A stretch of 64,000 nt of DNA, taken from the NCBI GenBank assembly GCA_002269645.1, contig NIVC01003892.1, forward strand, positions 7,186-71,185, given 5' to 3'. Origin of the DNA: Macrostomum lignano (lineage: Eukaryota). The notes beneath the pieces are model-generated. The model was not told where the DNA came from. It worked only from the letters and a program-made list of their open reading frames with translations, and made no database searches. A program made the translations under genes and the position numbers. This document shows positions 15,552-64,000 of this stretch, piece after piece (within the stretch, counting starts at the first letter, position 1; every line of letters begins with the position of its first letter).

Positions 15552-17662
<2,111 letters not shown>

Positions 17663-18558
17663 CTAGCCAGCTAGGCAGTGTACATGCTATTCTGTGCTAT
17701 GGGGTTGGCCCTCATGTGAGTAGAATGGCACGACATGCCCTCCAGGCCAGTTTTCATACTCGATTCCCCAGTTATGTTACCATGCAGAGAGCCGCACGTG
17801 GTTGATTTGACGCGAGAGGCATATGCGTTAACCGAAGAGATCAGTCTCTAACCGCCCCCGCTTTCTTTCGGCTCCAGCACGCAGGCCTGGTTTGGTGTGT
17901 AACTAACTATTATACTACTTGAGCAGGGCTGCTTTGCTCCAGCTTCTGTCAGTAGATTTATCTAGCATCTCTCCCAGTCCGTCCACCCTTTTAGTCCCAC
18001 ACGTACTCTCTTCTCCTCTCTTCCTTCCATACCATATTCTCTCCCCATCTCTGCCTTCGTCTCTCCCGACCCTGACGGTCCTCCTATACATTCTTCTTCG
18101 TTTGGTTTCCATGCTCTCAACTCCTTAAGCCCCTCACCAGACAGACAGCTCATAAAGCTACCAACTAAGAGTACTATAGTCCAATTTACTAACCCGTGAA
18201 TATCAAAAAAGTTAATTTAGCTCGTACAGGCATTTACATTCGTGTTTCAACCATAGTTAATTGGAAGTCGCAAGGGTAGAATCGACAGAGTTGGGGGGGA
18301 GGACGGGTGGGGGGTGTGGGGTAGAGCAGGGGGAGAGATTCAGGCAAAAGCAGATGGCCAATGAGCATATGTCGGCAATACAGGGAAATTAACTAACAGT
18401 GCCTCTCGCTGTGAGTGAAGTACAGGCGCATAAAGGACCGGATCTGTTCCATTCAGTACTTCTTAAAGAGCCCGGGCGAAAAGGAGAGCAAGGCAGTAGA
18501 CGAGAATTAAACTGTTTTAATAACGGTTTCATAACTAAAAACATTTGCCAATATAAAA

Positions 18559-21348
18559 ATGCCTACCGATACCATAACGAATCAGTCTGGCATTACTAAA
18601 CAGTCGGATTTACCGATTGATCCGACTGGTGCCTCCTCGACGAATCCACCGGAGGTGGAATACCACCGGGTGTCCCAGATGGACGATTCGCCGTCAGTGG
18701 GAGCCGAGGACGACGCTCGAGTTTTGATTGGCGGTCGCCACGCCACAATGTCGGGCATTCGGTGTCATCAGCAGCGACTGAGCGCCAAGCAGTTTGTCGG
18801 TCGGTGCCCAGCCTGCCATCAGCAGGTGACCTCACGGCTGACGTACAGAATCGGCTCGAGGAGCTGCACCACTGCTGCACTGCTTGTGTGTCCCGGGTGA
18901 GCGGTCTTGCCATTCTTGGTTTAACTTGAGCAGCTTTCACTACAGAGCTCATGGGGTATTGCTCAGGTGTCCATAGACTCGTGGGGCATTCCTCAGGTGC
19001 CTATAGACTCATGGGGCATTCCTCAGGTGCTTAGACTCATGGGGCATTCTTCAGGTGCCTATAGACTCATGGGGCATTCTTCAGGTGCCTATAGACTCAT
19101 GGGGCATTCTTCAGGTGCCTAGACTCATGGGGCATTCCTCAGGTGCCTATAGACTCGTGGTGCATTCCTCAGGTGCCTATAGACTCACGGGGCATTGCTC
19201 AGGTGTCTATAGACTCGTGGTGCATTGCTCAGGTGCCTATAGACTCATGGGGCATTCTTCAGGTGCCAATAGACTCATGGGGCATTCCTCAGGTGCCTAT
19301 AGACTCATGGGGCATTCCTCAGGTGCTTAGACTCATGGGGCATTCTTCAGGTGCCTATAGACTCATGGGGCATTCTTCAGGTGCCTATAGACTCATGGGG
19401 CATTCTTCAGGTGCCTATAGACTCATGGGGCATTCCTCAGGTGCCTATAGACTCGTGGGGCATTGCTCAGGGGCCTATAGACTCATGGGACATTCCTCAG
19501 GTGCTTAGACTCATGGGGCATTCTTCAGGTGCCTATAGACTCATGGGGCATTCTTCAGGTGCCTATAGACTCATGGGGCATTCTTCAGGTGCCTAGACTC
19601 ATGGGGCATTCCTCAGGTACCTATAGACTCGTGGTGCATTCCTCAGGTGCCTATAGACTCACGGGGCATTGCTCAGGTGTCTATAGACTCGTGGTGCATT
19701 CCTCAGGTGCCTATAGACTCATGGGGCATTCCTCAGGTGCCTATAGACTCATGGGGCATTCTTCAGGTGCCTATAGACTCATGGGGCATTCCTCAGGTGC
19801 CTATAGACTCATGGGGCATTCCTCAGGTGCTTAGACTCATGGGGCATTCTTCAGGTGCCTATAGACTCATGGGGCATTCTTCAGGTGCCTATAGACTCAT
19901 GGGGCATTCTTCAGGTGCCTATAGACTCATGGGGCATTCTTCAGGTGCCTATAGACTCGTGGGGCATTGCTCAGGGGCCTATAGACTCATGGGACATTCC
20001 TCAGGTGCCTAGACTCATGGGGCATTCCTCAGGTGCCTATAGACTCATGGGGCATTCCTCAGGTGCTTAGACTCATGGGGCATTCTTCAGGTGCCTATAG
20101 ACTCATGGGGCATTCCTCAGGTGCCTATAGACTCATGGGGCATTCCTCAGGTGCTTAGACTCATGGGGCATTCTTCAGGTGCCTATAGACTCATGGGGCA
20201 TTCCTCAGGTGCCTATAGACTCGTGGGGCATTGCTCAGGGGCCTATAGACTCATGGGACATTCCTCATGTGCCTAGACTCATGGGGCATTCCTCAGGTGC
20301 CTATTGACTCATGGGGCATTCATCAGGTGCCTATAGACTCATGGGGCATTCTTCAGGTGCCTATAGACTCATGGGGCATTCTTCAGGTGCCTATAGACTC
20401 ATGGGGCATTCTTCAGGTGCCTAGACTCATGGGGCATTCCTCAGGTGCCTATAGACTCGTGGGGCATTCCTCAGGTGCCTATAGACTCATGGGGCATTCC
20501 TCAGGTGCCTAGACTCATGGGGCATTCCTCAGGTGCCTATAGACTCATGGGGCATTCCTCAGATGCCTATAGACTCATGGGGCATTCCTCAGGTACCTAT
20601 AGACTCATGGGGCATTCCTCAGGTACCTATAGACTCATGGGGCATTCCTCAGGTACCTATAGACTCATGGGGCATTGCTCAGGTGCCTTAACTTTATTAA
20701 CTTCAAGATAATGTAACTGCTAAGATCTTTATTGCCGTTATGCCGAAACGCTAATTAAGTTCGTTCCTAGGCGGTGCGCACGTTACGTTTGCAACCCTCT
20801 AATTCGGCTAATTAAGTGTATTGTCATATAGTTTGAGAATAATCAAAGGACAGCAACTACCGGTATGTACATGTATCAAGGAGACCAGCGGCCCTGCAGG
20901 CTCGATTCCTAAGTGCAGTCATTATTTTGGGACTATTTTGGAATCTCGGCTTGGCTCTGCTCGTGCAATTAACGCCCTGAAAGTGTACATGCCTAAGGAT
21001 AAATAAAGTTAGGGCCGCTGTACACTCCTGTGTGAGTGTGTGCCTGCGTACGTATCCTTGCGCTTGTCTGCCTGCTCAGGGGAGTCGGCGGAATGGGCAG
21101 AATCGCCTCACTGCTGCACGATTCTGAGACGATGTCAGCTAGGGTGCCCGAGGCCCTCCTTTAGTCGTAATAATAGTAAAATGTACTTTTAGCAACTAAA
21201 GAGCATCAATATATCTTGTTATTTTAGGGGCCTTTTCATTTTGCCGGCAGCATTCTTCTGGCTTCCCCTGCTGCTGGACAACTTCAAGGATGTGGTTCAC
21301 ACCTGCCCACTGTGCAAATGCGAGATTGGCTGCTACAAACGGAGATAA
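18559..21348 (+). CDS. LITAF-domain (SIMPLE-like) protein, 152 aa. Exons 18559-18896, 21228-21348
   Basis: CPAC..VTS..Y..G motif in exon 1, a phase-2 GT-AG intron, then a hydrophobic stretch and LDNFKDVVHTCPLCKCEIGCYKRR*. This is the LITAF signature. Confidence 0.9.
18945..20690. repeat. 28/30-bp minisatellite in the LITAF intron
   Basis: GTGCCTATAGACTCATGGGGCATTC(C/T)TCAG units, roughly 60 copies. Confidence 0.97.
20883..21115 (+). mobile_element. tRNA-derived SINE family B, 5'-truncated copy
   Basis: GGCTCGATTCC box-B-like motif and a body (GGCTCTGCTCGTGCAATTAACG..GGCCGCTGTACACTCCTGTGTGAGTGTGTGCC..GCCTGCTCAGGGGAGTCGG) shared with the minus-strand copy at 34380-35560. Confidence 0.75.
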
Positions 21349-22581: not shown

Positions 22582-25325
22582 TCAGCCATTCACTGGCGGC
22601 AGCCTTTGATTCTGTTCCCGAGATTGTCCGCCGGACCGGCTGCTGGATTCTCTTCTAGGAGATGCTGCAGTTGAAGCAAATTTTGATAGTCGATTACTGC
22701 CAGTCTCCGGCCGGACAATCTGGCGTCTTGAAGCTTCGGGACTTGCGGCAGGCTGCTGCTGCTGTTGCTGCCGTTGCCTCTGCTCTTCGGCTTCAAGGGC
22801 CCACCGACGCAAAAGGGCTGAGCAGCCGGACTCAGCGAGACCCCGTTTGTAACAAAGTCTGATGGAGAAATAGGGAGGACTGAGGCTTAAATGAATAGCT
22901 AAGCGCCAAGCATAAGCCTACGGAATCGCGCCAAACTGAATTTATCTGCACGATGGCGCCAGATTAAACCTGTCTGATGGCGCCAAACTAAGCCTGTCTG
23001 ATGGCGTCAAACTAAGCCTGTCTGATGGAGCCAAACTAAGCCTGTCTGATGGAGCCAAACTAAGCCTGTCTGATGGCGCCAAACTAAGCCTGTCTGATGG
23101 CGCCAAACTAAGCCTGTCTGATGGCGCCAAACTAAGCCTGTCTGATGGCGCCAAACTAAGCCTGTCTGATGGCGCCAAACTAAGCCTGTCTGATGGCGCC
23201 AAACTAAGCCTGTCTGATGGCGCCAAACGAAGCCTGTCTGATGGCGCCAAACTAAGCCTGTCTGATGGCGCCAAACTAAGCCTGTCTGATGGCGCCAAAC
23301 TAAGCCTGTCTGATGGCGCCAAACTAAGCCTGTCTGATGGCGTCAAACTAAGCCTGTCTGATGGCGCCAAACTAAGCCTGTCTGATGGCGCCAAACTAAG
23401 CCTGTCTGATGGCGCCAAACTAAGCCTGTCTGATGGCGCCAAACTAAGCCTGTCTAATGGCGCCAAACTAAGCCTGTCTGATGGCGCCAAACTAAGCCTG
23501 TCTGATGGCGCCAAACTAAGCCTGTCTGATGGCGCCAAACGAAGCCTGTCTGATGGCGCCAAACGAAGCCTGTCTGATGGCGCCAAACTAAGCCTGTCTG
23601 ATGGCGCCAAACTAAGCCTGTCTGATGGCGCCAAACTAAGCCTGTCTGATGGCGCCAAACTAAGCCTGTCTGATGGCGTCAAACTAAGCCTGTCTGATGG
23701 CGCCAAACTAAGCCTGTCTGATGGCGCCAAACGAAGCCTGTCTGATGGCGCCAAACTAAGCCTGTCTAATGGCGCCAAACTAAGCCTGTCTGATGGCGCC
23801 AAACTAAGCCTGTCTGATGGCGCCAAACTAAGCCTGTCTGATGGCGCCAAACTAAGCCTGTCTGATGGCGCCAAACTAAGCCTGTCTGATGGCGCCAAAC
23901 TAAGCCTGTCTGATGGCGCCAAACTAAGCCTGTCTGATGGCGCCAAACTAAGCCTGTCTGATGGCGTCAAACTAAGCCTGTCTGATGGCGCCAAACTAAG
24001 CCTGTCTGATGGCGCCAAACGAAGCCTGTCTGATGGCGCCAAACTAAGCCTGTCTGATGGCGCCAAACTAAGCCTGTCTAATGGCGCCAAACTAAGCCTG
24101 TCTGATGGCGCCAAACTAAGCCTGTCTGGTGGCGCCAAACTAAGCCTGTCTGATGGCGCCAAACTAAGCCTGTCTGATGGCGCCAAACTAAGCCTGTCTG
24201 ATGGCGCCAAACGAAGCCTGTCTGATGGCGCCAAACTAAGCCTGTCTGATGGCGCCAAACTAAGCCTGTCTGATGGCGCCAAACTAAGCCTGTCTGATGG
24301 CGTCAAACTAAGCCTGTCTGATGGCGCCAAACGTAACCTGTTTAATAGCGCTAAATTAGGCCTGTTCTATCTGAATCTTTAATCTTGCCACAAACATAGT
24401 AAGCAATAAAAAACAGCAGTAACTTTCGATCCCTTCTCACCTGGCCTCCAGCTGGTAGTCTCTAGAAATAAGCGACTGTAGTTCGGCCAACTTTTGCACC
24501 ATCTTAATCTGTGTAAATAATAATAAAATTGTTTGGCGTATGTTGATAAACAAACAAGCTACTTATATCAGTAGAGAGTACGCAATCATACACTATTATA
24601 TATACCTGATTGCTGACAGGCGGAATGACTACCGACTTTGATCTTTGCCGGGGCGTCTCGAACGACACGTGGCGCGCTTCGGTTTTTGAATCTTTGCCCG
24701 CCTGAGGCTTTTCTTGCTCCGGTTTCTTTTTAATCGTTGCTTTATCGTCGTTTTTGTTGGCTTTGGTGGCAACGCTTGTCTTTTTGTCGGTTTTGCTTTT
24801 TACGATTGGCTCGGCAGACTTTGAGCGAATCTGCCGAACTGGCGCAGCTTTCGGCTTTGCAGCTTTGCCGATTTTTGTCTTCTTCTTTTTTCGCTGGGTT
24901 TTTGGTTGGGACATTTCCGTTTCTTTCGCTGGGCTGTCAGCTGATTGCTCGGGCAATTGCTGGTCTTTTGCGTCCGCAGTTGTCGATGAAATATCGTTCG
25001 CGTCTGCCTCCGGGTCAACGTCCTCGTGGGCGACTTCGTTTGTTTCTGGTTGATTTTGGTTCTCAGTAGGTTCTGGTTGTTCCTGGTTTTCTGTTGCTTC
25101 CGGATTCTCTGCTGCACAAGCGGTGTCGTTTGTAATGGATTCTTCCTCCTGTTGATCATCGTTGGACGCCAACAACTCTTCCTTCGATTCCTCAAGCTCT
25201 TTAGCGTCACTATTTTCGCCTTCCGTCTGTACTGACGGCGCATTTTCGTCGCTTTCGGCATTGGTTAGAAAAAATGCGCCGGACTCTGCCTGCGGCTGCG
25301 AAGGCTCCGACGATTGGTCGTCCAT
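22582..25325 (-). CDS. Orphan low-complexity protein (acidic N-half, Lys-rich middle, Gln/Arg/Ser tail), 354 aa. Exons (minus) 25325-24606, 24508-24441, 22858-22582
   Basis: A 240-codon open first exon ending CAG|GTATAT. Two further exons with good acceptors keep frame (1065 nt total) and join the 22582-22812 ORF. No recognisable domain. Confidence 0.7.
22940..24335. repeat. 24-bp minisatellite (about 58 units) in intron 2 of the minus-strand orphan
   Basis: CTAAGCCTGTCTGATGGCGCCAAA units; source of the APSDRLSL ORF. Confidence 0.97.
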
Positions 25326-26214
25326 GCGAGACCAGTCATGCAAATTGTTTTGATAGATTTTTTATGAACTTGTTACATGTGATTTACTAAGATAACAGTG
25401 CATGAATGTATCTATGATCTATGTATATGTTGTGCCGATTGAGGCTATATTACGACATAAAAAACAAGCTAATTTTCATTTATGCAAGAATTGGCAAGTA
25501 TTTTTTAGAGCCCTTTTCGTTGGAACATGATCTTTAAGACAGAAATGTAAAAAAATCATTTTAAAGTATATTCAACTGTCCTTACTTTTTAACATGCCTC
25601 AAAACAAAAAGGTTTTCATATATGATCATCAAACCATGTATTACCTATCTAAAACATATCATAAATCCAGAGGAGAAGTCAGATAAGGTAAAGTGTTTAA
25701 GCATCCTGATCCTTAAAACACACAGGATTCTAATTGCTTTAAAGAGCAAAAATAGAATCAGACTAAAATCAGTGACAGTAATCACTATTCACAATGAAAT
25801 GACCTGTGATCTAAATGTGAAACCAATCTTAAAAATAAAATGAATCAAAAACTTTAAAACAAATGAATTATATAGGGCCAGTAATCGCCTTTTACTTCTT
25901 GAATCATACTGTTTCTCTGAGAAATACTCGAGTCTCGCGGCTCGCTTTAAAGGAACTTTAGTAGTCCTGACTCGCCAGTCGCCCTTAAAAAAGTTCACTA
26001 AACATATTAAAAAATCACATAACCTACGCGCAATTAAAATTGTTGTTTCACGGGAAACGATTGGATTCACATAAATAAACAACAGTCTATTTTTAAATGC
26101 ATTTATGAATAAATCCAAAATAAAAATAGTCTATTTCATAAAATTTATGCTTTTATTAACACGTATCGGGGTCGTGAACTTTCCTGCTATTGCAGTTTTC
26201 AATGCTTTTAAATG

Positions 26215-29100: not shown

Positions 29101-32100
29101 ATGCCTCCAATTGCCAAGAGAAAAGCTAAGAAAAGGCGACTTCTGTGTCGCGGCCGACCCAAGGGCCCAATGAAGCGACCGCGGCTTGAAGTTTTCGGAC
29201 TGCCTTTAGCTGGCCAGTCTGGCCGAAACAGCAGCGAAGATTCTAGCGACGAGGAAGACTGCCAAGAAGTTGTGGCCGCTGAGTGGCCAGTTCAGCTGGG
29301 GCAGTGCTTGGGCGGCTTCCAGCTGGAGTCCGAGCTGGACAGGAAGCAGAACTGCTGCATTGCCGGCTGCACAGTTGAGCTGAGCGGGCCTGCGAAGGTG
29401 TGAGGGGTCAAAAGGTCAAATATGCGTGATTTGCTAAAGCTGTTATTGTTAGTTTTGTCGAATTGCTCGTCTAGAGGCTAAGCTTACTATCTTAGTACTG
29501 TGTACTATCCCAGAATCCCAGATCCTCAGTAGCTGGGCCAGCCTCCCAGATCCTCGGTAGCTGGGCCAGCCTCCCAGATCCCCATGCAGTTGCTGGGCCA
29601 GCCTCCCAGATCCCCAGTTGCTGGACCAGCCTCTCAGATCCCCAGTTGCTAGGCCAGCCTCCCAGATCCCCATGCAGTTGCTGGGCCAGCCTCCCAGATC
29701 CCCAGTTGCTAGGCCAGCCTCCCAGATCCCCATGCAGTTGCTGGGTCAGCCTCCCAGATCCCCAGTTGCTAGGCCAGCCTCCCAGATCCTCAGTTGCTGG
29801 TCCAGCCTCCCAGATCCCCAGTTGCTAGGCCAGCCTCCCAGATCCCCATGCAGTTGCTGGGCCAGCCTCCCAGATCCCCAGTTGCTGGACCAGCCTCTCA
29901 GATCCCCAGTTGCTAGGCCAGCCTCCCAGATCCCCAGTTGCTGGACCAGCCTCTCAGATCCTCAGTTGCTAGGCCAGCCTCCCAGATCCCCAGTTGCTAG
30001 GCCAGCCTCCCAGATCCTCAGTTGCTAGGCCAGCCTCTCAGATCCTCAGTTGCTGGTCCAGCCTCTCAGATCCCCAGTTGCTAGACCGGCCTCCAAGATC
30101 CTCAGTTGCTGCTATTGCTGGTCCAGCCTCTCAGATCCTCAGTTGCTGGGCCAGCCTCTCACATCCTCAGTTGCTGAGCCAGCCTCTCAGATCCTCAGTT
30201 GCTGGTCCAGCCTCTCAGATCCCCAGTTGCTAGGCCAGCCTCTCAGATCCTCAGTCGCTGGGCCACCGGCCTCCCAGATCCTCAGTTGCTGGGCCACCCG
30301 CCTCCCAGATCCTCAGTTGCTGGGCCACCCGCCTCCCAGATCCTCAGTTGCTGGGCCACCCGTCTCCCAGATCCTCAGTTGCTGGGCCACCCGCCTCCCA
30401 GATCCTCAGTTGCTGAGCCACCCGCCTCCCAGATCCTCAGTTGCTGGGTCACCCGCCTCTCAGATCCTCAGTTGCTGGTCCAGCCTCTCAGATCCCCAGT
30501 TGCTAGGCCAGCCTCTCAGATCCCCAGTTGCTAGGCCAGCCTCTCAGATCCCCAGTTGCTAGGCCAGCCTCTCAGATCCTCAGTCGCTGGGCCACCCGCC
30601 TCCCAGATCCTCAGTCGCTGGGCCACCCGCCTCCCAGATCCTCAGTTGCTGGGCCACCCGCCTCCCAGATCCTCAGTTGCTGGGCCACCCGCCTCCCAGA
30701 TCCTCAGTTGCTGGGCCACCCGCCTCCCAGATCCTCATTTGCTGGGCCACCCGCCTCCCAGATCCTCAGTTGCTGGGTCACCCGCCTCCCAGATCCTCAG
30801 TTGCTGGGTCACCCGCCTCCCAGATCCTCAGTTGCTGGGCCACCCGCCTCCCAGATCCTCAGTTGCTGGGCCACCCCGCCTCCCAGATCCTCAGTTGCTG
30901 GGTCACCCGCCTCCCAGATCCTCAGTTGCTGGGCCACCCGCATCCCAGATCCTCGGAATGGTTAACAATCTGTCTCAATAACCCCAATAACCGCAGGTGC
31001 CTCTCTGCAAGCTCCGTTGCGGCCTGTACGAGCTCCGGCCGGGCAGCGGCGCCCTGGACTTCGTTTGCACCGGGCACGCAGCCGCCGCAGCCGCGGGTTG
31101 CGAGCTGGCCGCCTTGCACGGGCCGGGCCCCGCGCCCGCCCCAGAGGCCCGCGTCTGCCTGCTGTGCAAGTGCAGCTGCTTAACCTACGGTGTAGCCTGC
31201 ATCAGGCACAGCGTCCCGGCGCCTAGCGACCTGTTTCTCAACGACTGCAGTGGCGCCGGCGGCTCCTCAGTCCGCCTGTGCTCCAGTTGCGCTCACGTCG
31301 ACGCTCTCGAATTGGAATCCGGCAGTGCAACCGGCGCTACAGTCTTTCACTTCGCTTGTCGGCGCTGTCACTCAAATCTGATTGGCGGCGGCAGCTTGGC
31401 CATCGAGCAACAGCTGGCTGGCGAAGCTAAAGACGCTAACGAGAAAGATAATAGCCTACTTATTAGTAGTAAATTGGACGTTGATGACGACGAAGTTGGT
31501 GGCTATTTTGCCGAATTGCCGTCCAGCGGGGTGAGTCGTATGGGTTAAATTGAGTTGCAATGGAGTGATAATAGAGACACAATGGAGTGATAATAGAGAC
31601 ACAATGGAGTGATAATAGAGACACAATGGAGTGATAATAGAGACACAATGGAGTGACAATAGAGACACAATGGAGTGATAATAGAGACACAATGGAGTGA
31701 TAATAGAGACACAATGGAGTGACAATAGAGACACAATGGAGTGACAATAGAGACGCAATGGAGTGACAATGGAGATGCAACAGGGTGACGAGGAGACAAT
31801 GGAGTGACAGACAGGCCTGGCACAATAGGATCAATCGAACCTCAAGTGTCGGCTATTTGCTCAGGCAGCAGTTAATTTAAAAGTATATGCGAACCTCTGT
31901 TCAACCTGCCGCAGGTGCCAGCGCCGCCGCCGCCGCAGCCGTCAGTTTCGCTGTCAGCTGACTCGCTCGAAGCTTCGCTTCTGTCTGAGCAGCGGCGCCG
32001 TCGACGCATCCAGTTGACGCGGAGCTTCTCAGCCGGTCTGCATGCCGCCTCTCGAACCGATTTGGAACGCCGCCTCGCCGACCGGCTACTTGACTTGCCC

Positions 32101-33699
32101 GACAACGTCTGGGATCGGCACTCGACCGACTGCTCAGCGACGTCAACGTCGGGTTTGGCTTTCGGCCCCGGCTGTCGCCTGTTCCTGGATCGGCTGGTCT
32201 CCGCCGATTTCCAAAGTCCGCTGGTCGCCCTAGACGGATCTGTTGCCGAGCTTCAGCCGAGACTGTCCGAGCGCTGTCCGGTTGTCCGGCTGCACCTCGG
32301 CGGGAGCGTGGCCGACTATGTCGAGTTGCGACTGTCGGCCGATTCTGGCTCCGACGCCTCCCTGACGGTGCCGCTGCCGGCAGCCGTCGCCGAGGTTGCC
32401 TGCGTTTATCTGCGATGCCTGCTCGGCGAGCTGCCCGACCTTTCCCTGTGCGGCGGCGTCAGTGGCAGCGGCGGCAGGCGTCGGCACTCGCGTCGCTGCC
32501 AGGTGCTGATGCTTGACCGCGATGCCGCCTGCTGCTTGGCTTGTCGCCAGCAGCAGCGGCAGGTCGCGACGACGGCAGATTCGACAACGGCTACGAAGGA
32601 TGCCGCCGCGCCAAGCTGTTCGTCGGCGCCGTTCCTGGAGCCGCCAGTCGAGCCTTCTCTGCGGCGTCTTCGATGCCTGGTGGATTTGTGCGGCCGCTGC
32701 TCAGCCCTGGAGCCCGGCTCCGATCTCTGCCTGCTGCTGGGACACTCGCTCAAATCCGCTCTGGTTGCGCGACAGGGCGCTCAGGTGAGTGAATGAGTGA
32801 GTGAGTCAGTAAGGGATTGAGCGAGTAAGTGAGTGATTGACTGAGTGAGTGAGTGAGTGAGTGAGTGAGTAAGTGAGTAAGTGAATGACTGGGTGAGTGA
32901 GTCAGGGAGTAAGTGAGTGAATGAATGAGTGAGTCAGTGAGTAATTGAGTGAGTGAGTGAATGAATGAGGGAGTGAGTGAGTGAGTGATTGAGTGAGTGA
33001 GTGAATGAATGAGGGAGTGAGTCAGTGAGGGATTGAGCGAGTGAGTGAGTGAGTGAATAAATGAGGGAGTGAGTCAGTGAGTAATTGAGTGAGTGAGTGA
33101 GTGAATGAATGAGGGAGTGAATCAGTGAGTGATTGAGTGAGTGAGTGAATGATTAAGTGAATGAGTAAATGAATGAGGGAGTGACTGAGGGAGTAAATAA
33201 GTGAGTGAATGAATGAGTGAATGAATGAGATAGTGAGTGAGTGAGTGAATGAGTAACTGAGTGAATGAGTGAGTGAGTGAATGAGGGAGTGCTTGAGTGA
33301 TAATGACTGACAGTTGCACAATCGCATTCTCAACTTGATTGTCGGCCTTCACCCACGCAGCTCGCTGGCGCCCGTCTGCCCCCGCTGACCTGTCACAGTC
33401 GGGTGCTGCAGCTGGCCGCCGGCCTGTTGTGCACCCTGGGCAGTCGGGCCTACTCGCTGGTGACTCTCAACCTGCCTCTTGGCCTGCCATCGGCTGGGGA
33501 GCTGGCCGGCTGTCATCTAAGCGAGGACTTGCTGACTGTTCTGCGGCATCGCGACCAAGAGCTCGAGTCGGCGAAGCGATCCGGCTTCAGAGTTGTCGAC
33601 GCTGGCACTGCTGCCAGCCAAACTGCCGGATCTCGTAACAGCACAACAGTTTCCAATAAGCGAATGTCTGTTAAACGTGTTCAGGTGATCATACCTTGA
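29101..33699 (+). CDS. Uncharacterised Cys-rich, probably nuclear protein, about 679 aa. Exons 29101-29397, 30997-31530, 31915-32784, 33361-33699
   Basis: Four GC-rich open segments joined by three phase-0 GT-AG introns (2040 nt). N-terminal basic KRKAKKRR and RGRPKG; CxxC-x22-CxxC at 31279-31368. The start codon is an inference. Confidence 0.75.
29515..30955. repeat. 28-31-bp minisatellite in intron 1 of the Cys-rich gene
   Basis: CCCAGATCCTCAGTTGCTGGGCCAGCCT units grading into ...GGCCACCCGCCT units. Confidence 0.95.
31553..31810. repeat. 22-bp minisatellite in intron 2 of the Cys-rich gene
   Basis: CAATGGAGTGATAATAGAGACA units (31561, 31583, 31605). Confidence 0.95.
32785..33305. repeat. 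Degenerate (GTGA/GAAT)n microsatellite filling intron 3 of the Cys-rich gene
   Basis: Begins at the GTGAGT donor itself. Confidence 0.9.
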
Positions 33700-37800: not shown

Positions 37801-38764
37801 CAATGCCGATGGAGATTCCATCGACAATCAGTTCAATCAGATAGGGGTCAGGTTGGGGTTTAGGGTTTAGGGTCCCCATCCCTAGTTAAAGAGTTTTTAT
37901 TCATAGTCAGCCCAAAGGCCATGATAAAGGTTGGTGGGCTACCCAAGAAGGGGCGCAGTGTACTCACCCGGGGAAGTAGGCCAAAAGAACCCGACACCAG
38001 CAGGGGGACCGCTAGCGACCGGACTACACCCCGGTATCCCAGCCCATCGGCATGCTCAAACACCTTGGGCATTAGAGGTCGACAAATAGCAGTGCCAGCA
38101 GGTATCGCAGTCTAGCTGCGTACCTTCTGTTTTGGTCAAAGGGGTGGCACCTGATATCGCACAGGTAAGCGTATCGTGATAACCCCGTACCCTTAGAGGC
38201 TAAGGCCAGAGGCCAGAGCCCCAGAAGGGTAACCGGCGCTGTTGCCCATCCCTGCGGTCTACCTGGAACACCTGCGGGGCGTGTACGAGCGTACCCCTGG
38301 GTCGGCTGGTGCAACAGCATCGACCTCCAGCCATGCCTGCTCTAAAGAGAGGTTGGTTGAGTAGGTGCGAAGCATATATTGAAAATCTGCATGTTAGTTA
38401 TTAACTACAGTCTTGAAAGACTGAATGAGAGATGCATGGGACCCCAGGTGCGCTTAGTTCTCTTTTATGAGAAAAAATGCCGGTTCAAAGCAACGCAATG
38501 ATTGTAAGAAACTTCTAACGCCTCCAGGTTTCCACAATGTTCTTTGAACCATTCATGCAATCATGCGTGCGGATTCTTCGAAATCGAAACAAACTAAAAG
38601 AGTTTTTTCAATTTTTTTCAACATGCATTTCTCAAAGAATGTTAACTACCACATTGCCTTCGGTTCAGAACGCAAGAGCGTCAGAGCGACTCGGTTCACT
38701 TTTGCAGCAATTTTTTTTAGAAAAAAAATATTTTACAACAGCACACAGGACACACAGGTTAGTG

Positions 38765-41700
38765 CGCCAGCTACAGAGGGGCGCCAGCTACAGAGGGGCG
38801 CCAGCTACAGAGGGGGCGCCAGCTACAGAGGGGGCGCCAGCTACAGAGGGGGCGCCAGCTACAGAGGGGGCGCCTGCCAGCTACAGAGGGGGCTCCAGCT
38901 ACAGAGGGGGCGCCAGCTACAGAGGGGGCTCCAGCTACAGAGGGGGTGCCAGCTACAGAGGGGGCTCCAGCTACAGAGGGGGCGCCAGCTACAGAGGGGG
39001 CGCCAGCTACAGAGGGGGCGCCTGCCAGCTACAGAGGGGGCTCCAGCTACAGAGGGGGCGCCAGCTACAGAGGGGGCTCCAGCTACAGAGGGGGCGCCAG
39101 CTACAGAGGGGGCTCCAGCTACAGAGGGGGCTCCAGCTACAGAGGGGGCGCCAGCTACAGAGGGGGCTCCAGCTACAGAGGGGGCTCCAGCTACAGAGGG
39201 GGCTCCAGCTACAGAGGGGGCGCCAGCTACAGAGGGGGCGCCAGCTACAGAGGGGGCGCCTGCCAGCTACAGAGGGGGCTCCAGCTACAGAGGGGGCGCC
39301 AGCTACAGAGGGGGCGCCAGCTACAGAGGGGGCGCCAGCTACAGAGGGGGCGCCAGCTACAGAGGGGGCTCCAGCTACAGAGGGATCGCCAGCTACAGAG
39401 GGGGCGCCAGCTACAGAGGGGGCTCCAGCTACAGAGGGGGCTCCAGCTACAGAGGGGGCGCCAGCTACAGAGGGGGCGCCAGCTACAGAGGGGCGCCAGC
39501 TACAGAGGGGGCTCCAGCTACAGAGGGGCGCCAGCTACAGAGGGGGCTCCAGCTACAGAGGGGGCTCCAGCTACAGAGGGGGCGCCAGCTACAGAGGGGG
39601 CGCCAGCTACAGAGGGGCGCCAGCTACAGAGGGGGCTCCAGCTACAGAGGGGGCTCCAGCTACAGAGGGATCGCCAGCTACAGAGGGGGCGCCAGCTACA
39701 GAGGGGGCGCCAGCTACAGAGGGGGCGCCAGCTACAGAGGGGGCTCCAGCTACAGAGGGATCGCCAGCTACAGAGGGGGCGCCAGCTACAGAGGGGGCTC
39801 CAGCTACAGAGGGGGCTCCAGCTACAGAGGGGGCGCCAGCTACAGAGGGGGCGCCAGCTACAGAGGGGCGCCAGCTACAGAGGGGGCTCCAGCTACAGAG
39901 GGGCGCCAGCTACAGAGGGGGCTCCAGCTACAGAGGGGGCTCCAGCTACAGAGGGGGCGCCAGCTACAGAGGGGGCGCCAGCTACAGAGGGGCGCCAGCT
40001 ACAGAGGGGGCTCCAGCTACAGAGGGGGCTCCAGCTACAGAGGGATCGCCAGCTACAGAGGGGGCGCCAGCTACAGAGGGGGCGCCAGCTACAGAGGGGG
40101 CGCCAGCTACAGAGGGGGCGCCTGCCAGCTACAGAGGGGGCTCCAGCTACAGAGGGGGCGCCAGCTACAGAGTGGAGGCGCCAGCTACAGAGGGGGCGCC
40201 AGCAACAGGGGGGGTTCCAGCTACAGAGGGGGCGCCAGCTACAGAGGGGGTGCCAGCTACAGAGGGGGTGCCAGCAACAGGGGGGTTCCAGCTACAGAGG
40301 GGGCGCCAGCTACAGAGGGGGCGCCAGCTACAGAGGGGGCTCCAGCTACAGAGGGGGTGCCAGCTACAGAGGGGGTGCCAGCAACAGGGGGGTTCCAGCT
40401 ACAGAGGGGGCGCCAGCTACAGAGGGGGCGCCAGCTACAGAGGGGGCTCCAGCTACAGAGGGGGTGCCAGCTACAGAGGGGTGCCAGCTACAGAGGGGGT
40501 GCCAGCAACAGGGGGGGTTCCAGCTACAGAGGGGGTGCCAGCTACAGAGGGGGCGCCAGCTACAGAGGGGGTGCCAGCAACAGGGGGCGCCCAGCTACAG
40601 AGGGGGCGCCAGCTACAGAGGGGGCGCCAGCTACAGAGGGGGCTCCAGCTACAGAGGGGGCTCCAGCTACAGAGGGGGCGCCAGCTACAGAGGGGGGGCG
40701 CCAGCTACAGAGGGGGTGCCAGCTACAGAGGGGGCGCCAGCTACAGAGGGGGTGCCAGCTACAGAGGGGGCTCCAGCTACAGAGGGGGCTCCAGCTACAG
40801 AGGGATCGCCAGCTACAGAGGGGGCGCCAGCTACAGAGGGGGCGCCAGCTACAGAGGGGGCGCCAGCTACAGAGGGGGCGCCTGCCAGCTACAGAGGGGG
40901 CTCCAGCTACAGAGGGGGCGCCAGCTACAGAGCGGAGGCGCCAGCTACAGAGGGGGCGCCAGCAACAGGGGGGGTTCCAGCTACAGAGGGGGCGCCAGCT
41001 ACAAAGGGGGTGCCAGCTACAGAGGGGGTGCCAGCAACAGGGGGGGTTCCAGCTACAGAGGGGGCGCCAGCTACAGAGGGGGCGCCAGCTACAGAGGGGG
41101 CTCCAGCTACAGAGGGGGTGCCAGCTACAGAGGGGGCGCCAGCTACAGAGGGGGTGCCAGCTACAGAGGGGGTGCCAGCAACAGGGGGGTTCCAGCTACA
41201 GAGGGGGTGCCAGCTACAGAGGGGGCGCCAGCTACAGAGGGGGTGCCAGCTACAGAGGGGGTGCCAGCAACAGGGGGGGTTCCAGCTACAGAGGGGGTGC
41301 CAGCTACAGAGGGGGCGCCAGCTACAGAGGGGGTGCCAGCAACAGGGGGCGCCCAGCTACAGAGGGGGCGCCAGCTACAGAGGGGGCGCCAGCTACAGAG
41401 GGGGCTCCAGCTACAGAGGGGGCTCCAGCTACAGAGGGGGCTCCAGCTACAGAGGGGGCGCCAGCTACAGAGGGGGGGGGCGCCAGCTACAGAGGGGGTG
41501 CCAGCTACAGAGGGGGCGCCAGCTACAGAGGGGTGCCAGCAACAGGGGGCGCCCAGCTACAGAGGGGGTGCCAGCTACAGAGGGGGCGCCAGCTACAGAG
41601 GGGGCGCCAGCTACAGAGGGGGCGCCAGCTACAGAGGGGTGCCAGCTACAGAGGGGGCGCCAGCTACAGAGGGGGCGCCAGCTACAGAGGGGGCGCCAGC

Positions 41701-42325
41701 TACAGAGGGGGCGCCAGCTACAGAGGGGGTGCCAGCTACAGAGGGGACGCCAGCTACAGAGGGGGCGCCAGCTACAGAGGGGGCGCCAGCTACAGAGGGG
41801 GCGCCAGCTACAGAGGGGGTGCCAGCAACAGGGGGCGCCAGCTACAGAGGGGGGGGCGCCAGCTACAGAGGGGGACGCCAGCTACAGAGGGGGCTCCAGC
41901 TACAGAGGGGGCGCCAGCTACAGAGGGGGCTCCAGCTACAGAGGGGGCTCCAGCTACAGAGGGGGCGCCAGCTACAGAGGGGCTCCAGCTACAGAGGGGG
42001 CTCCAGCTACAGAGGGGGCCAGCTACAGAGGGGGGACGCCAGCTACAGAGGGGGCGCCAGCTACAGAGGGGACGCCAGCTACAGAGGGGGCGCCAGCTAC
42101 AGAGGGGACGCCAGCTACAGAGGGGGCGCCAGCTACAGAGGGGACGCCAGCTACAGAGGGGGCGCCAGCTACAGAGGGGGCGCCAGCTACAGAGGGGACG
42201 CCAGCTACAGAGGGGGCGCCAGCTACAGAGGGGGACGCCAGCTACAGAGGGGGCGCCAGCTACAGAGGGGGACGCCAGCTACAGAGGGGGCGCCAGCTAC
42301 AGAGGGGGGCGCCAGCTACAGGGGG
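38765..42325. repeat. 17-18-bp minisatellite, about 3.6 kb
   Basis: CCAGCTACAGAGGGGGCG units. All three plus-strand frames are stop-free, giving the 1200-1300 aa artefact ORFs. A short inverted copy lies at 42712-42736. Confidence 0.97.
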
Positions 42326-43060: not shown

Positions 43061-43339
43061 TCATCAAATCTTAATGGCGCCAATCAACAAAACTCAGGGC
43101 ACTCTAAAAAACTTTAATCCAGCATTTTTTCGCCTAATCGTGTCAGTCCAATGTTGGTTGCTCATCAATCTCCAGGACCAATAAGGCTGCCCCGTTGTCC
43201 ACTACAACCAATAGCAACCCAGTCTTTCCCAGCTAGCAAACATAAAAAAGTAATCTTTTTCTTTCTTCAGAAAAGCTTCTCGATTTTAAAATCCTGAAAC
43301 TTAAGAAAGTGAGGAAAACATTCAACCAATTGCGAAAAA

Positions 43340-45887
<2,548 letters not shown>

Positions 45888-58674: not shown

Positions 58675-60919
58675 GGCGGCACGTCGGCTCGCGCTCGAAA
58701 AGGCCGTGCTCTTCCCCCCTGCGCCTCGAAAGGGTTTCCGGACCTTCGGCCTCGTTCCTCCTACCTTCGGCCGAGGTCACTCGTGATCCTTCCTCCACCG
58801 GCCTTCGCCCCCTGCCTGGTCAACTTCCTGACGTTCCGTCCCCCAAGCTTGGGTCATCGTCACCCATCAGCTTCCGCTTCACCAGTTAAGTCCCCCTGAA
58901 CAGCATCGCCCGTGACTTCCCGGTCGTAATCTAAGAGCAGCGACAGCAACCGGCCAGTGGAGAACAACTGCGGTGCTCATCAACTAAGATCAGCAGCAGC
59001 ATCCCATCCGAGCGCTTCGGTCTCTGTGGAATCCTTGGCAACCGGCGGTTAGGTCCTCTGATTGGTAGGGTGAGAGACTTTCTTGACCTGCTTAACTGGG
59101 TGCGCCCCTTGTCTGGCCCCTTCCTAGGTAGTCTGATAGGATTTGCACTTTTGCTTATTTGTTTTCGTGTGCCAAAATCGAGGCAGAAGTTCCGTATAAT
59201 ACTAAAAGTAGCCATTTGCTCTGACTCGATCTAAGGTGTTTAGGATTGCGGATTAAGTGAGAAAGTTAAATCTGGAAGTTAAAGACTTGGCGCTTTCTTT
59301 CTTTTTCACAATGCCTGCTGAGATAAGCGCGCTAGATCTAGGGGCAGAGGTCACAGTGGACCGGAAGCGGCACAGTTCCCAGTCAATCAGTCGATCTAAG
59401 CAATCAATATAAACATGCAAACTAAGGGCCAGGCTGGTACTTTCGTGCAGTCTCAGGCAGCTAAGCGGCTAAAACGAGATAAATGTTAGTCTAAAGATCT
59501 CCAAAGGCGGCAATGCATCTACATCATCGCTATCTGTCGACCTGCTAACACATTTAGTGCCAAAAGCGTGCAGTTACGTGTACTTGTACATGTAAACTTC
59601 TGGGAATTTGGTAGTACATTGGCGGTGCTTGAAAGCTCGCCAGCGCAAGAACCCCTGCAGAAGTCCTCTCTGTCCCTGCATGACCAATGCGATCTGAGTC
59701 CCAGCAGTGTCCTTCTATTCGGCTATTACTTCGGATAGACAGCTAAAAGACACTAGATGGCAGGTAAGTGCAGTACCCCTCTAGTCGGAAGTCCGATTTC
59801 GACAGCTCCGGTTTGGTGAGCCGGGGCGCACGCACTGGTGGCAGCGGGTTAGTTAGTCTGCGGATTAGCTAATTTCTACCTTTCAAATTCCCCCTGCTTG
59901 TCTCTCGCTGTCTTCTCTTAGCTATAGGACCTAGCTGCTCGCCCACAATCTAGCTACCACGGGGCTGACCATCTGACAGGAGTGAGAGGCCAGAGTTCTC
60001 TCACTACAGGCTTTTAAGCTACAGGCTTAAAAGGCCGAACCCATCACAAGCACTGCAGAGACTACTAAGTTCAGTAGTTTATTTCGCACTGTCACGAAAC
60101 GCAAACTATTTTACATTGGCTTCTATGGCCACATAAGTGGTTAATGAGTGATATCCATCTTTTGCATATATGATCTTTAGGCGGAACCGCTCCTCTGAAG
60201 CGGTTGACGCGTCCAAAGAAGGTAGTAACCGTGGCCTATGGCCAGTATGTCTATGGCCACAAGACTATTGATTCAGTGTAAAATCAGCGGGATGGGCACG
60301 AAACTTCGAGACGACTGTCTATGGTAAATCCATACTTGACATACTGGACACGCGCCCTGGTCTGCTGCAGCGCCCATCTGTAAAACTGAAGAAAGTTTCT
60401 TAGAAACAGAAATGAAGGTGACAAGTGCTACTAACAGTAGTGCGGCACGGGTGCTTCTATTAGTATTTTAACTATTTTACACGCAACGTATATCGCCGAG
60501 ACGGATTAGGAGTAAGTGCAGCCGCGATGAAGTGCTGCCCGGTGATTGGATCTCTAGAGTCTTCCTCTGTCCATTCTCCTACTTCACTGCAATGGATCCC
60601 TGAGCTTCTGAAGGGGTGGCTGCTTAGACCGTCTTATCTAAGAATCCATTGGTAGCTAGAGGCCCAAGCTTCGTCCTAGCACTACCGTCCTGACCTGATT
60701 AGAGGGAGTTGCATCGTCCAAACCGAGATTTAGCTACAGACAACTACTATTTTTTCTTTAAGAAAAAGTTAGCCATAACTAAAACTCGCGGTGATGCCAG
60801 AGCCTCCGCTGCTGGCATCCAAATGATGCTTGCCTGCCGGATAGCGAAAGCAAACAGCTTCAGTGTCACTGGCAACAAATCTATCAACCCTCGTTGGTTG
60901 CGGCCACGCCAACAGAATA

Positions 60920-61053
60920 ATGTCTAGCGAAATTGAAGTGGAAGTGCAAGCCGAAGAGGAGATCCCTTATCCGGGATTCTATCCTATCGCGTTGCGCTAC
61001 TTTCATCAGCGTCATCCGGTCAGGAACTGGTGCCTGAGAGCCGTCACTTGGCC
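60920..61053 (+). CDS. First coding exon of a voltage-gated calcium channel alpha-1 subunit, T-type (Cav3)-like; the rest of the gene lies outside the window
   Basis: MSSEIEVEVQAEEEIPYPGFYPIALRYFHQRHPVRNWCLRAVTWP matches the Cav3 pre-IS1 motif (PYP..APV.F..L.Q...PR.WCLR.V.NPWFE) and ends at a U12-type donor. Confidence 0.85.
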
Positions 61054-61062
61054 ATATCCTTT
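61054..61062 (+). other. U12-type (AT-AC) 5' splice site ATATCCTTT
   Basis: Exact minor-intron donor consensus, phase 2 in the Pro codon. Read-through hits a stop after 4 codons. Confidence 0.85.
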
Positions 61063-62289
61063 TTTCTAATTCCGGTATGCATTCTAGAATTGTCTATATC
61101 AGCACCGATTCATGGACCACTGAGCTCTGTAGGCTGGACTGGATCCAGCAGTATTGTCCGTGTCAGAGAAACTTATCTCTGTTTTAGTTTTGTAGTTAGC
61201 ACAGCAGTGAGGATTTACCATAGACAGTCGTCTCGGGGTTTGTGCCCTCCCGCTGATTTTACAATGAATCAAAGGTCTTTTGGCCATAGACCATACCACA
61301 GATAACGACTAAAGTACTTGAGTTAGACTAATGAATCAATCATAGATTGCGCCTATGGTTTTGTGAATTGGACCATGATGAACTCACTAAACCACGATAA
61401 ACCATGATAGATTTATATCTTTTCAACTTCGAATTCCATTTACCATTTTATTTAAGAATTTTAAGAATATTTAAAACACTGATAATCATAGTCAAACAAT
61501 GTTTCCACTTTCGTCTATGGTCAAAACACCGTCTATAGTCTATGGCACAGCAGACAGAGCATCGAATTTAAGACACAGTGCGAATCTTCGAAGCTTGAGT
61601 TGAATATGGTTGGCCCCGTATCTCAAATTGAAGGCTCGGCTTCTTTTAATGGAACTAAAAATGTTATATTCATTCATTTTAAACTTTAAAGCAACATTCG
61701 AAGTTCATTAGGAAGGCCATTAAGACATAAAGCGCTTAACTAGGCCTAAATATCTGAAAGCATTGATGTATTAGCGTTCTCAGAGGAGCCGCACTACAAG
61801 AATAGCACTGAGCACACACACACTAATGCGAGACGAATAAAGAACTCGCTCTAAAACGACTCGAAAAAGGAATTGAGCGGGAGGTCGTTGGGGGGGGGGC
61901 ACTCCTTTAGCATTGCTTCTCTCTGCCCTAAGTACGATCGTAGTACATAAGACTTATTCGCGAGAAAAAAAGGCCTCAAAAATCTGCCAAATTAACTTTT
62001 ACTGGCCCAGGACCTAAGAGAGTAGTGAGAGGGTAGTGAGTAGTTAAACGAAATAGAGCGGAGCAGAGACGCTAATCGTGACCCCCCGCGGGGCTCAGTT
62101 TTAATTGACTGGCCTAAGAGTTGATGGAGCTGAGTGGAGAGAGAGAAGGAAAGCCAAGGGAAGATAAAAAAGGGGAGGGGGATAAATGTAATTTTCATCG
62201 CCCTTAGGGACGTCAAATTAGTCTATATACACGTATACATGTAGAGGATTCTGGCCACGTTCATGCTAAATGACTTCTCAAACCACATA

Positions 62290-62464
62290 TTCTATAGATG
62301 TGTCAGTCCAGCATTTGTTAGTGTGTTATCGCCAACCTAAGAGATTCTATATTACATAGATGTGTCAGTCCAGCATTTGTTAGTGTGTTATCGCCAACCT
62401 AAGAGATTCTATATTACATAGATGTGTCAGTCCAGCATTTGTTAGTGTGTTATCGCCAACCTAA
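62290..62464. repeat. 62-bp tandem repeat, about 3 units
   Basis: TAGATGTGTCAGTCCAGCATTTG at 62295, 62357 and 62419. Confidence 0.93.
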
Positions 62465-63924
62465 GGGCCACAGGCGCTCACATGCTGCTGCTAATGCTTG
62501 AGCGCAGCTGAAGCTACAGTCTATGGTCTTAACTCCCGGGGTTTCCTGGCCCCAAACAAAGAATCCATTACTCATAGACCTTAGCATTGAATGTTAAACT
62601 GATTAAATTTTCAAACTTTTACAACGAAAAATGTCATGTTAATATTATGAGTAAATAAATATTCACGAAACTTATTCGCGACAGAATATTCAAAATCAAA
62701 ATCGGGAATCTTAAAAACACTTTTTATTACGAGTGTATCAGCTTCAGCTGGCGCAGAATTGAATTAATGCTTCGGGGCAGCCCTTTCGCCAGCTGGGTAG
62801 GGTCTCTCCGCATGACTGGCTGCTCAGGGAACAGGCAGGAGGCGGGATGCAAGGAAAATTAGCATAACTACATTCCACGCCAGCTAACGGTATCTCGGTG
62901 TTGCAGACAAAAAAACTAAAGAAATTAAATCAGAATCTCCGCCCCAGAATAACCAGAAGCGAACAACAACATGCAGAAATCTTCTCTCCTGGGCATTCAT
63001 TTAATCTTGGCCATGAGCATAATTTTCGGCAAGACTCCCAATTGTCAGAGAATTTTGACACGCAATATTTTTAACAACTGAAAAAAGATCATCTTGTCCT
63101 GAAGAACGCCATAAATCTAAATGAGTTCTCTAACTCCTCTCTCACTGGAACACTGTAGCGTATAAAAGAGCCATGTGTTAGGTGGCTTGTTGAGCTAAGA
63201 ATAGTGTATGTTATTTCGTTTTTCTGCTCGGTAGGAGCGCAAATCAATAGTTAACCTGTTTTTAGGACAGCACAGTACACTATTGCGGTAGCCAGTCAGT
63301 CAGTCATTCCCGTTTCATTAATAAGAATTCGCTGACTTCCCTTTCCTTTATACAGCGATAGGGCGATTCAAAGCATTAAAATATCGTGCCAACACGGTAT
63401 CCCATCGCCCCTCAATTGCATTAGCCAAGCTCATATGAAATAGGAAGCCGAAGGCATTGCCCACATCCGCCTGGGCTGCAGTGCACGCATTCAGTGTAAT
63501 GCACTACTCTCTCCTCTCCGACACACACGCGCAAAAATGCTCTTCCGTTTTAGACACACACAGACACCACACACCACACAGACTCACTCCGATTTTTTTC
63601 TCCTTCTCTGGCTCTGCATCAGTCGTCGATTAGATTTCAGACTCGAACAGAACTTTTCAGCCGTAGGCCGCATGCAGGAAACGGAGGAGTTGCTTGCTTG
63701 CTCAAATTCAATACGGCAGTTGGGGGGGGGACCATGGCGAGGCGGGTATTGGGAGAAGATGAATTGTGTGCCAGAACCAGTTAAACTTGTGTTTGCACTG
63801 TGACACAACTCTCTCTCTCTCTCTCTCTCTCTCTCTGCTCACTGTTGAGCTTGCAGTCTGTAGTCGTTAGTCCTGGAAGAGCATCTGAAGGCTGCGTACG
63901 GCTGTTCAGTCCAAGGACTGGGGG

Positions 63925-64000
63925 GGGAGGTCGCCACACACACCCTCAATTACCCCAGCTAATGCTGGTTACCCATTTTACAGCTGGGTGAACTGAAGCA
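63925..64000 (-). mobile_element. 3' part of CORE-like SINE family A, cut by the window end
   Basis: The reverse complement reads TGCTTCAGTTCACCCAGCTGTAAAATGGGTAACCAGCATTAGCTGGGGTAATTGAGGGTGTG. Confidence 0.85.

What the first reader, a model, noticed from the sequence alone, without database searches (positions are those of the whole stretch)
61040..61070. Minor-spliceosome AT-AC intron at the conserved first-intron position of a T-type calcium channel
Seen: the coding exon stops at TGG CC|ATATCCTTT, the exact U12 donor consensus. No usable GT donor preserves the frame, and read-through ends at YPFF*. Established: voltage-gated Ca and Na channel alpha genes carry U12-type introns, and the minor spliceosome has been lost in several lineages (for example Caenorhabditis). 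Inference: this genome retains a functional U12 system. That is phylogenetically informative if it is a flatworm, and the intron (over 2.9 kb, no branch site plus WFE exon seen in the window) is long for a minor intron.
Basis: partly seen in the sequence, partly recalled or inferred. Interest (0 to 1): 0.7.

Follow-up and report, generated by a model that had tools for sequence, protein, structure and literature searches.

The report
Conserved minor-spliceosome intron in flatworm calcium-channel gene
The first coding exon of a T-type calcium-channel gene in the flatworm Macrostomum lignano ends at a textbook minor-spliceosome (AT-AC) splice donor, but this intron is already known at the same spot in channel genes across animals, so the finding is correct and ordinary.

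Summary
An ORF starts at ATG 60920 and its homology to Cav3 (T-type) N-termini ends at 61053 (…TGG CC). The next bases are ATATCCTTT, the only ATATCCTT on either strand of the 64 kb. Read-through stops at TAA 61068-61070.

The window is from Macrostomum lignano: a GPCR gene at 43.3-45.9 kb matches a UniRef M. lignano protein at every aligned residue.

An exhaustive search with the 45-aa exon peptide found 50 short ORFs or gene models from other animals with the same N-terminal motif. They include a bivalve, ticks, a fish and the monogenean flatworm Protopolystoma. In 49 of 50 the motif is followed by P-Y-P-x, the translation of CC|ATATCC in phase 2. Five fetched loci show …CC|ATATCCTTT in DNA. 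One shows the whole 1,410-nt intron: TTCCTTAAC branch site, terminal AC, then exon 2 (P)WFERLSM…, which matches human Cav3.1 from W82.

The 3' end of the M. lignano intron lies beyond the window, and there is no RNA evidence.

The literature already describes this U12 intron in Cav and Nav genes, and minor snRNAs in schistosomes and planarians. The phylogenetic signal is therefore weak. A length over 2.9 kb is not unusual, since two comparators exceed 10 kb. Interest is low.

The parts
60920..61053 (+). First coding exon of a Cav3 (T-type) calcium-channel alpha-1 gene. It encodes MSSEIEVEVQAEEEIPYPGFYPIALRYFHQRHPVRNWCLRAVTW plus CC of a Pro codon (134 nt, ends in phase 2).
   Evidence: Searches give the ORF, frame and upstream stop at 60842; profile HMM of 50 homologues, 66.7 bits, E 1e-19; the best PDB hits are Cav3.1 residues 48-79 and Cav3.3.
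61054..61062 (+). U12-type AT-AC 5' splice site ATATCCTTT (9/9 to the consensus), followed by a T run to 61065.
   Evidence: it is the only ATATCCTT in the window. Searches show the same position and phase in orthologues.
61054..64000 (+). The 5' portion (at least 2,947 nt) of the minor intron. The branch site, terminal AC and exon 2 lie beyond the window end. It contains a 62-nt x 2.9 tandem repeat at 62287-62465.
   Evidence: no exon 2 and no TCCTTRAY; the tandem repeat.
61068..61070 (+). TAA stop reached if the intron is read through (...TWPYPFF*).

Best explanation
Positions 60920-61053 are the first coding exon of a Macrostomum lignano Cav3 (T-type) calcium-channel alpha-1 gene. The exon ends two bases into the Pro codon that precedes the WFE start of segment IS1. 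Position 61054 is the 5' splice site of the ancient U12-dependent AT-AC intron shared by Cav and Nav channel genes.

Shown here:
- exon homology to Cav3 N-termini;
- a perfect ATATCCTTT donor;
- identity of position and phase with orthologous introns in other animals.

Inferred from established knowledge of minor splicing: U11 snRNP pairs with ATATCCTTT. U12 pairs with a TTCCTTRAC branch site 10-15 nt upstream of a terminal AC that lies beyond the window. U4atac/U6atac.U5 then catalyse removal, joining CC to A TGG TTY GAR to read P-W-F-E. Minor introns are removed slowly, so this step may limit channel mRNA output.
For: Organism: the GPCR at 43262-45884 matches a UniRef M. lignano protein at every aligned residue. 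The only difference is a 2-residue gap at my guessed exon border.

Exon identity: HMM E 1e-19, the only hit in the window. The top three PDB hits out of 177,635 sequences are Cav3.1 (two constructs) and Cav3.3 N-termini, ending just before W82.

Donor: ATATCCTTT occurs once in the window, exactly at the end of the homology.

Comparative evidence:
- 50 of 54 significant hits are Cav3 exon-1 ORFs, and 49 of those 50 read ...[WN]P-Y-P-x.
- DNA of Protopolystoma, Dreissena and three unnamed assemblies shows CC|ATATCCTTT in phase 2.
- L004 shows donor 2045, TTCCTTAAC at 3436-3444, AC ending at 3454, and exon 2 WFERLSM... Its best PDB hit is Cav3.1 (E 5e-155), aligned from W82 of 6kzo_A.

Literature:
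- The IS1 U12 AT-AC site is conserved in Nav1, Nav2, Cav1, Cav2 and Cav3 (PMC6259924).
- Drosophila Ca-alphaT has an AT-AC U12 intron with a U12 orthologue in human (PMC2831892).
- The mouse Cacna1h exon 2-3 intron is U12-dependent (PMC9643518).
- M. lignano is included among the Cav3-bearing flatworms analysed in PMC7382465.
Against: - The branch site, 3' AC and exon 2 are not in the window, so the intron is only half seen.
- There is no transcript evidence.
- No minor snRNA lies in the 64 kb. That is expected and uninformative. M. lignano's minor spliceosome was not tested.
- No protein in the 5.8-billion-sequence collection shares even three 5-mers with this exon, so no public gene model includes it.
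- An 85-nt inverted repeat brackets the exon, which leaves a small chance that it is a rearranged fragment.
- The 50 comparators were retrieved with the M. lignano peptide as query, so the HMM score is partly circular.
Confidence: 0.9

Rival explanations
1. The exon is an orphan copy that is not joined to a working Cav3 gene. It could be a duplicated, rearranged or transposon-associated fragment of Cav3 exon 1 with its donor. The intact motif would then be young rather than maintained by selection.
For: - The rest of the gene is not in the window.
- An 85-nt inverted repeat (60249-60331 and 61211-61291, about 90% identical) brackets the exon and donor.
- About 40% of the window is tandem repeat.
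- No public protein model contains the exon.
Against: - The ORF is intact, has a start codon, and carries every conserved family residue (66.7 bits).
- The donor matches the consensus 9/9.
- The repeat arms have no other copy in the window, and no target-site duplication is evident.
- Missing gene models are expected, because the same exon is cut off from the rest of the gene in other species' annotations.
Confidence: 0.06
2. The intron is removed by the major spliceosome, either from a GT donor within the exon or as a U2-type AT-AC intron. The ATATCCTTT would then be incidental.
For: GT dinucleotides exist at 61019, 61030 and 61043, and the one at 61030 has the same phase. A U2-dependent AT-AC subclass is known in channel genes (Wu and Krainer 1997, cited in PMC2831892).
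Against: These GT sites read GTCAGG, GTGCCT and GTCACT, and using them would delete the conserved WCLRxxT[WN]P. From established knowledge, U2-type AT-AC donors lack the ATATCC box. 49 of 50 orthologues keep ATATCC at this exact position, and L004 has the matching U12 branch site 11-12 nt from AC.
Confidence: 0.02
3. A chance ORF happens to end next to a chance ATATCCTT.
For: A single ATATCCTT per 64 kb is within the chance expectation (mean 2.39).
Against: The chance of the motif at one specified position is about 2e-5. The ORF matches the Cav3 N-terminal profile at E 1e-19, and orthologues share the junction.
Confidence: 0.005

Closest known systems
The domain I S1 (D1S1) U12-type AT-AC intron of four-domain voltage-gated Ca and Na channel genes (Spafford 1999; Wu and Krainer 1999; Fux et al. 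2018, PMC6259924)
   Same: The donor ATATCCTTT is the same. The location is the same, immediately before the WFE start of IS1, and the gene class is the same (Cav3).
   Different: Nothing in the part that is visible. The branch site and 3' AC are outside the window, so they were not compared.
Drosophila Ca-alphaT AT-AC U12 intron and the mouse Cacna1h exon 2-3 U12 intron (PMC2831892, PMC9643518)
   Same: Both are AT-AC or U12-dependent introns of a T-type channel gene. The fly intron is reported to have a U12 orthologue in human.
   Different: The exon number differs in mouse (exons 2-3). The M. lignano N-terminus is very short, with 14 residues before the IPYPGF motif compared with 23-234 in the other sequences.
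Orthologous Cav3 exon 1 and intron in the Logan contig SRR23372229_379463 (L004) and in the monogenean flatworm Protopolystoma xenopodis (L001)
   Same: The junctions read ...ACCTGGCC|ATATCCTTT and ...ACTTGGCC|ATATCCTTT in phase 2. L004 shows the full intron, with TTCCTTAAC, a terminal AC and exon 2 WFERLSM.
   Different: The L004 intron is 1,410 nt, whereas the M. lignano intron exceeds 2,947 nt. The Protopolystoma contig ends 97 nt after the donor.

Membership tests
U12-type (minor-spliceosome) AT-AC intron | 5' splice site |ATATCCTTT at the exon end | tested here: met
   9/9 match at 61054-61062, and the only ATATCCTT in the window.
U12-type (minor-spliceosome) AT-AC intron | Branch site TTCCTTRAC 10-15 nt upstream of the 3' end, without a long polypyrimidine tract | tested here: inconclusive
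   No TCCTTRAY in 61054-64000, so the 3' end lies beyond the window. It is present in the orthologous intron of L004.
U12-type (minor-spliceosome) AT-AC intron | Terminal AC dinucleotide followed by the next exon in the correct phase | not testable with these tools
   Exon 2 is not in the window, and M. lignano genomic DNA is not in the contig collections that can be searched.
U12-type (minor-spliceosome) AT-AC intron | Same position and phase as established U12 introns in orthologous genes | tested here: met
   49 of 50 homologues read CC|ATATCC in phase 2. Five DNA loci confirm it. The literature agrees.
U12-type (minor-spliceosome) AT-AC intron | The genome encodes U11, U12, U4atac and U6atac snRNAs and minor-specific proteins | not testable with these tools
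   Only 64 kb are available, and no snRNA hit appears at the gathering or relaxed threshold. These components are known in other flatworms.
U12-type (minor-spliceosome) AT-AC intron | A spliced transcript uses the junction | not testable with these tools
   No RNA data are available. No protein in the database spans exon 1 to exon 2 for this gene.
Cav3 (T-type) voltage-gated calcium channel alpha-1 gene | Conserved cytoplasmic N-terminal motif LPYPGF...R.WCLR..T[WN]P immediately before IS1 | tested here: met
   HMM at 66.7 bits, E 1e-19. phmmer against PDB gives Cav3.1 and Cav3.3 as the top three hits. tblastn gives E 1.5e-5.
Cav3 (T-type) voltage-gated calcium channel alpha-1 gene | Four-domain, 24-TM Ion_trans body with the Cav3-type pore | not testable with these tools
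   This part lies downstream of the window. In L004 the same exon-1 type is followed by a domain I whose best PDB match is Cav3.1 (E 5e-155).

The most novel reading that the evidence does not exclude
The 85-nt inverted repeat (60249-60331 and 61211-61291, about 90% complementary) encloses exon 1 and the U12 donor in an approximately 880-nt loop. If transcription starts upstream of the left arm, the repeat could form a long RNA duplex. That duplex might hide the U11 target or present it, adding a lineage-specific structural switch on minor-intron removal of the channel gene.
Probability: 0.04. Interest if true: 0.4.

Novelty: already known. Interest (0 to 1): 0.13.

Why it matters
It adds one more species, from an early-branching flatworm lineage (my own knowledge of flatworm phylogeny), to the list of animals that keep the ancient U12 intron of Cav and Nav genes. 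That implies M. lignano still has minor splicing.

The practical value is for annotation. No public M. lignano protein model contains this exon. In several other animals the same exon is deposited as a stand-alone 'hypothetical protein' ending in ...PYPF, because gene-calling did not join the exons across the AT-AC intron. Searching for that tail is a quick way to find and repair truncated Cav3 models.

Tried and rejected
- A word-indexed homologue search with the 45-aa exon found nothing. The exhaustive HMMER search was needed.
I also used a WF[ED] scan and a branch-site scan. None found it.
- Rfam scans for minor snRNAs in the window gave 0 hits at gathering threshold. The relaxed scan gave only sub-threshold miRNA-like and sRNA-like matches, several of them within tandem-repeat arrays.
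- Literature searches for Macrostomum with 'minor spliceosome' or 'AT-AC', and for flatworm with 'minor intron', returned nothing. The supplements held for Larue and Roy 2023 do not list Macrostomum. Bartschat and Samuelsson 2010 does not mention flatworms.
- The bacterial promoter and terminator scan is irrelevant to a eukaryotic gene and found nothing.
- Any available Cav3 or minor-spliceosome query would be non-flatworm, and M. lignano proteins would not reach the 120 hits listed.
- I considered the inverted repeat as the ends of a transposon. I found no other copy in the window and no clear target-site duplication.

Full report
**Observation.** The + strand reads …CGT CAT CCG GTC AGG AAC TGG TGC CTG AGA GCC GTC ACT TGG CC|ATATCCTTTTTTCTAA. 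The ORF opens at ATG 60920, and an in-frame TAG lies upstream at 60842-60844. It encodes MSSEIEVEVQAEEEIPYPGFYPIALRYFHQRHPVRNWCLRAVTW plus two bases of a Pro codon, 134 nt in all, so the exon ends in phase 2. Read-through gives PYPFF and then TAA at 61068-61070. ATATCCTT occurs once on both strands of the 64 kb, at 61054. Shuffled sequence gives 2.39 per window, so one copy is unremarkable in itself. What matters is that it falls at one particular base, with a chance of about 2e-5. GT dinucleotides inside the exon (61019, 61030, 61043) read GTCAGG, GTGCCT and GTCACT, and using them would remove conserved residues. GTATGC at 61075 follows the stop.

**Organism.** A three-exon amine-receptor gene lies at 43262-45884 (+). 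It matches a UniRef protein of Macrostomum lignano at every aligned residue, apart from a 2-residue gap at an exon border that I had guessed. About 40% of the window is tandem repeat.

**Is the exon a Cav3 exon?** Three tests say yes.
- phmmer of the 45-aa peptide against all PDB sequences gave human Cav3.1 (two constructs) and Cav3.3 as the top three hits. The alignment covers residues 48-79 of 6kzo_A, just before W82-F-E of IS1.
- An exhaustive HMMER search of 1.84 billion representatives gave 54 hits at E ≤ 1e-3. Fifty of them carry the motif LPYPGF…R.WCLR..T[WN]P. A profile built from those 50 cores hits only this ORF in the six-frame window (66.7 bits, E 1e-19). That score is partly circular, because the 50 sequences were retrieved with this peptide.

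**Is the junction the conserved U12 junction?** The 50 hits are short ORFs or short gene models that stop soon after the motif.
- In 49 of 50 the motif is followed by P-Y-P-(F/L/W/C/S), the translation of CC|ATATCCTT read in phase 2. This conserved 'peptide' is intronic sequence held constant by the U12 donor consensus.
- The named sources are Dreissena polymorpha, the ticks Dermacentor silvarum and Rhipicephalus microplus, the fish Knipowitschia caucasica and the monogenean flatworm Protopolystoma xenopodis.
- DNA fetched for five hits shows the junction directly:

| Locus | Source | Junction |
|---|---|---|
| L001 | Protopolystoma xenopodis | acttggcc\|ATATCCTTTA |
| L002 | ENA assembly | cctggcc\|ATATCCTTTTT |
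| L004 | Logan contig | cctggcc\|ATATCCTTTTT |
| L005 | JGI contig | aatcc\|ATATCCTTTTC |
| L006 | Dreissena polymorpha | catggcc\|ATATCCTTTTT |

- L004 holds the complete intron. The donor is at 2045, TTCCTTAAC at 3436-3444, and the intron ends in AC at 3454. Exon 2 then begins A TGG TTC GAA…, reading (P)[25 protein letters not shown]. That ORF's best PDB matches are Cav3.1, Cav3.2 and Cav3.3 (E 5e-155 to 1e-145), aligned from W82 of 6kzo_A.

The M. lignano junction is therefore the same intron, in the same codon and the same phase.

**What is missing.** Nothing in 61054-64000 resembles exon 2 or a U12 branch site. The intron is longer than 2,947 nt and its 3' end is outside the window. No RNA data are available. 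No snRNA gene lies in the window at the gathering or relaxed threshold, which is expected for 64 kb and says nothing about the genome. No protein in the 5.8-billion-sequence collection shares even three 5-mers with the exon, although that collection holds M. lignano proteins. Public gene models therefore omit it.

**Mechanism.** The exon identity, the perfect U12 donor and the orthology of position and phase are shown. The rest is inferred from the established minor-splicing pathway. U11 pairs with ATATCCTTT. U12 pairs with a downstream TTCCTTRAC close to a terminal AC. U4atac/U6atac.U5 then catalyse removal, joining CC to A TGG TTY GAR. Slow removal of minor introns may limit channel mRNA levels, as discussed for Cacna1h (PMC9643518). 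I put 0.9 on this reading.

**Rivals.**
- An orphan or rearranged exon copy (0.06). The points in its favour are that the rest of the gene is unseen and that an 85-nt inverted repeat (60249-60331 and 61211-61291, about 90%) brackets the exon. Against it stand the intact ORF and the perfect donor.
- Major-spliceosome use of a GT donor or a U2-type AT-AC intron (0.02). The poor GT sites and the conserved ATATCC box argue against it.
- Chance (under 0.01).

**Comparison with what is known.**
- Fux et al. 2018 state that the D1S1 splice site is a U12 AT-AC site conserved in almost all calcium and sodium channels, including Cav3 (PMC6259924).
- Lin et al. 2010 list an AT-AC U12 intron in the Drosophila T-type channel gene Ca-alphaT, with a U12 orthologue in human (PMC2831892).
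- Minor snRNAs are reported in Schistosoma (PMC2770079) and Schmidtea (PMC6312358). Minor introns are reported in Schistosoma (PMC10639083).
- M. lignano is named among the flatworm Cav3 genes analysed in PMC7382465.

Both the kind of intron and its presence in flatworms are thus already known. I found no paper mentioning it for Macrostomum. The claim that the intron is long for a minor intron fails, because the orthologous intron has no exon 2 within 10 kb in Dreissena or in the ENA assembly.

**Verdict.** The finding is correct and well read, but ordinary. The useful by-product concerns annotation. Cav3 exon 1 is left as a separate truncated ORF or protein record, ending in the tell-tale …PYPF tail, in many public assemblies and annotations, and it is absent from M. 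lignano protein models.

Noticed in passing
window 60249-60331 and 61211-61291: An 85-nt inverted repeat, about 90% complementary, brackets Cav3 exon 1 and the first 157 nt of the intron. There is no other copy in the window. Each arm begins with GTCTATGG, a motif that recurs around the exon and in the 49-nt tandem arrays elsewhere in the window.
   Followed up: partly
proteins P0121-P0174; loci L001-L006: About 50 database entries are Cav3 exon 1 read through into the U12 intron, ending ...[WN]PYPF. They include deposited 'hypothetical proteins' of Dreissena (KAH3871521.1), ticks (KAH7950350.1, KAL3206026.1), Protopolystoma (VEL38741.1) and a goby. This is a recurrent annotation artefact caused by the AT-AC intron.
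   Followed up: yes
window 43262-45884 (+): A three-exon tyramine/octopamine-like amine GPCR gene, with an intron inside the DRY motif (DR|Y) and microsatellite-filled introns. It matches a UniRef M. lignano protein at every aligned residue and identifies the organism.
   Followed up: yes
window about 5599-8470 (+): Exons of a CUB-domain plus trypsin-like serine protease gene (Pfam CUB E 7e-9; Trypsin E 2e-17 and 1e-6), with minisatellites in its introns.
   Followed up: partly
window 4373-4916 and 8568-8853: Two arrays of the same 49-nt tandem repeat lie in opposite orientation about 3.6 kb apart, flanking the protease exons.
   Followed up: no
window 1-2206, 15540-17666, 18940-20688, 22952-24365, 38764-42325 and others: Tandem-repeat load is very high, about 25 kb of 64 kb. 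It includes a 2.2-kb (CTAT)n run at the window start and a 3.5-kb array of an 18-nt G+C-rich unit that creates spurious ORFs of more than 1,200 aa in three frames.
   Followed up: no
window 31915-32796 (+) and 24504-25343 (-): Two long non-repetitive ORFs (293 and 279 aa) have no Pfam match. They may be exons of unannotated genes.
   Followed up: partly
window 60920-60961: The M. lignano Cav3 N-terminus before the IPYPGF motif is only 14 residues, compared with 23-234 in other species. An upstream coding exon is not excluded, but an in-frame stop lies at 60842.
   Followed up: partly
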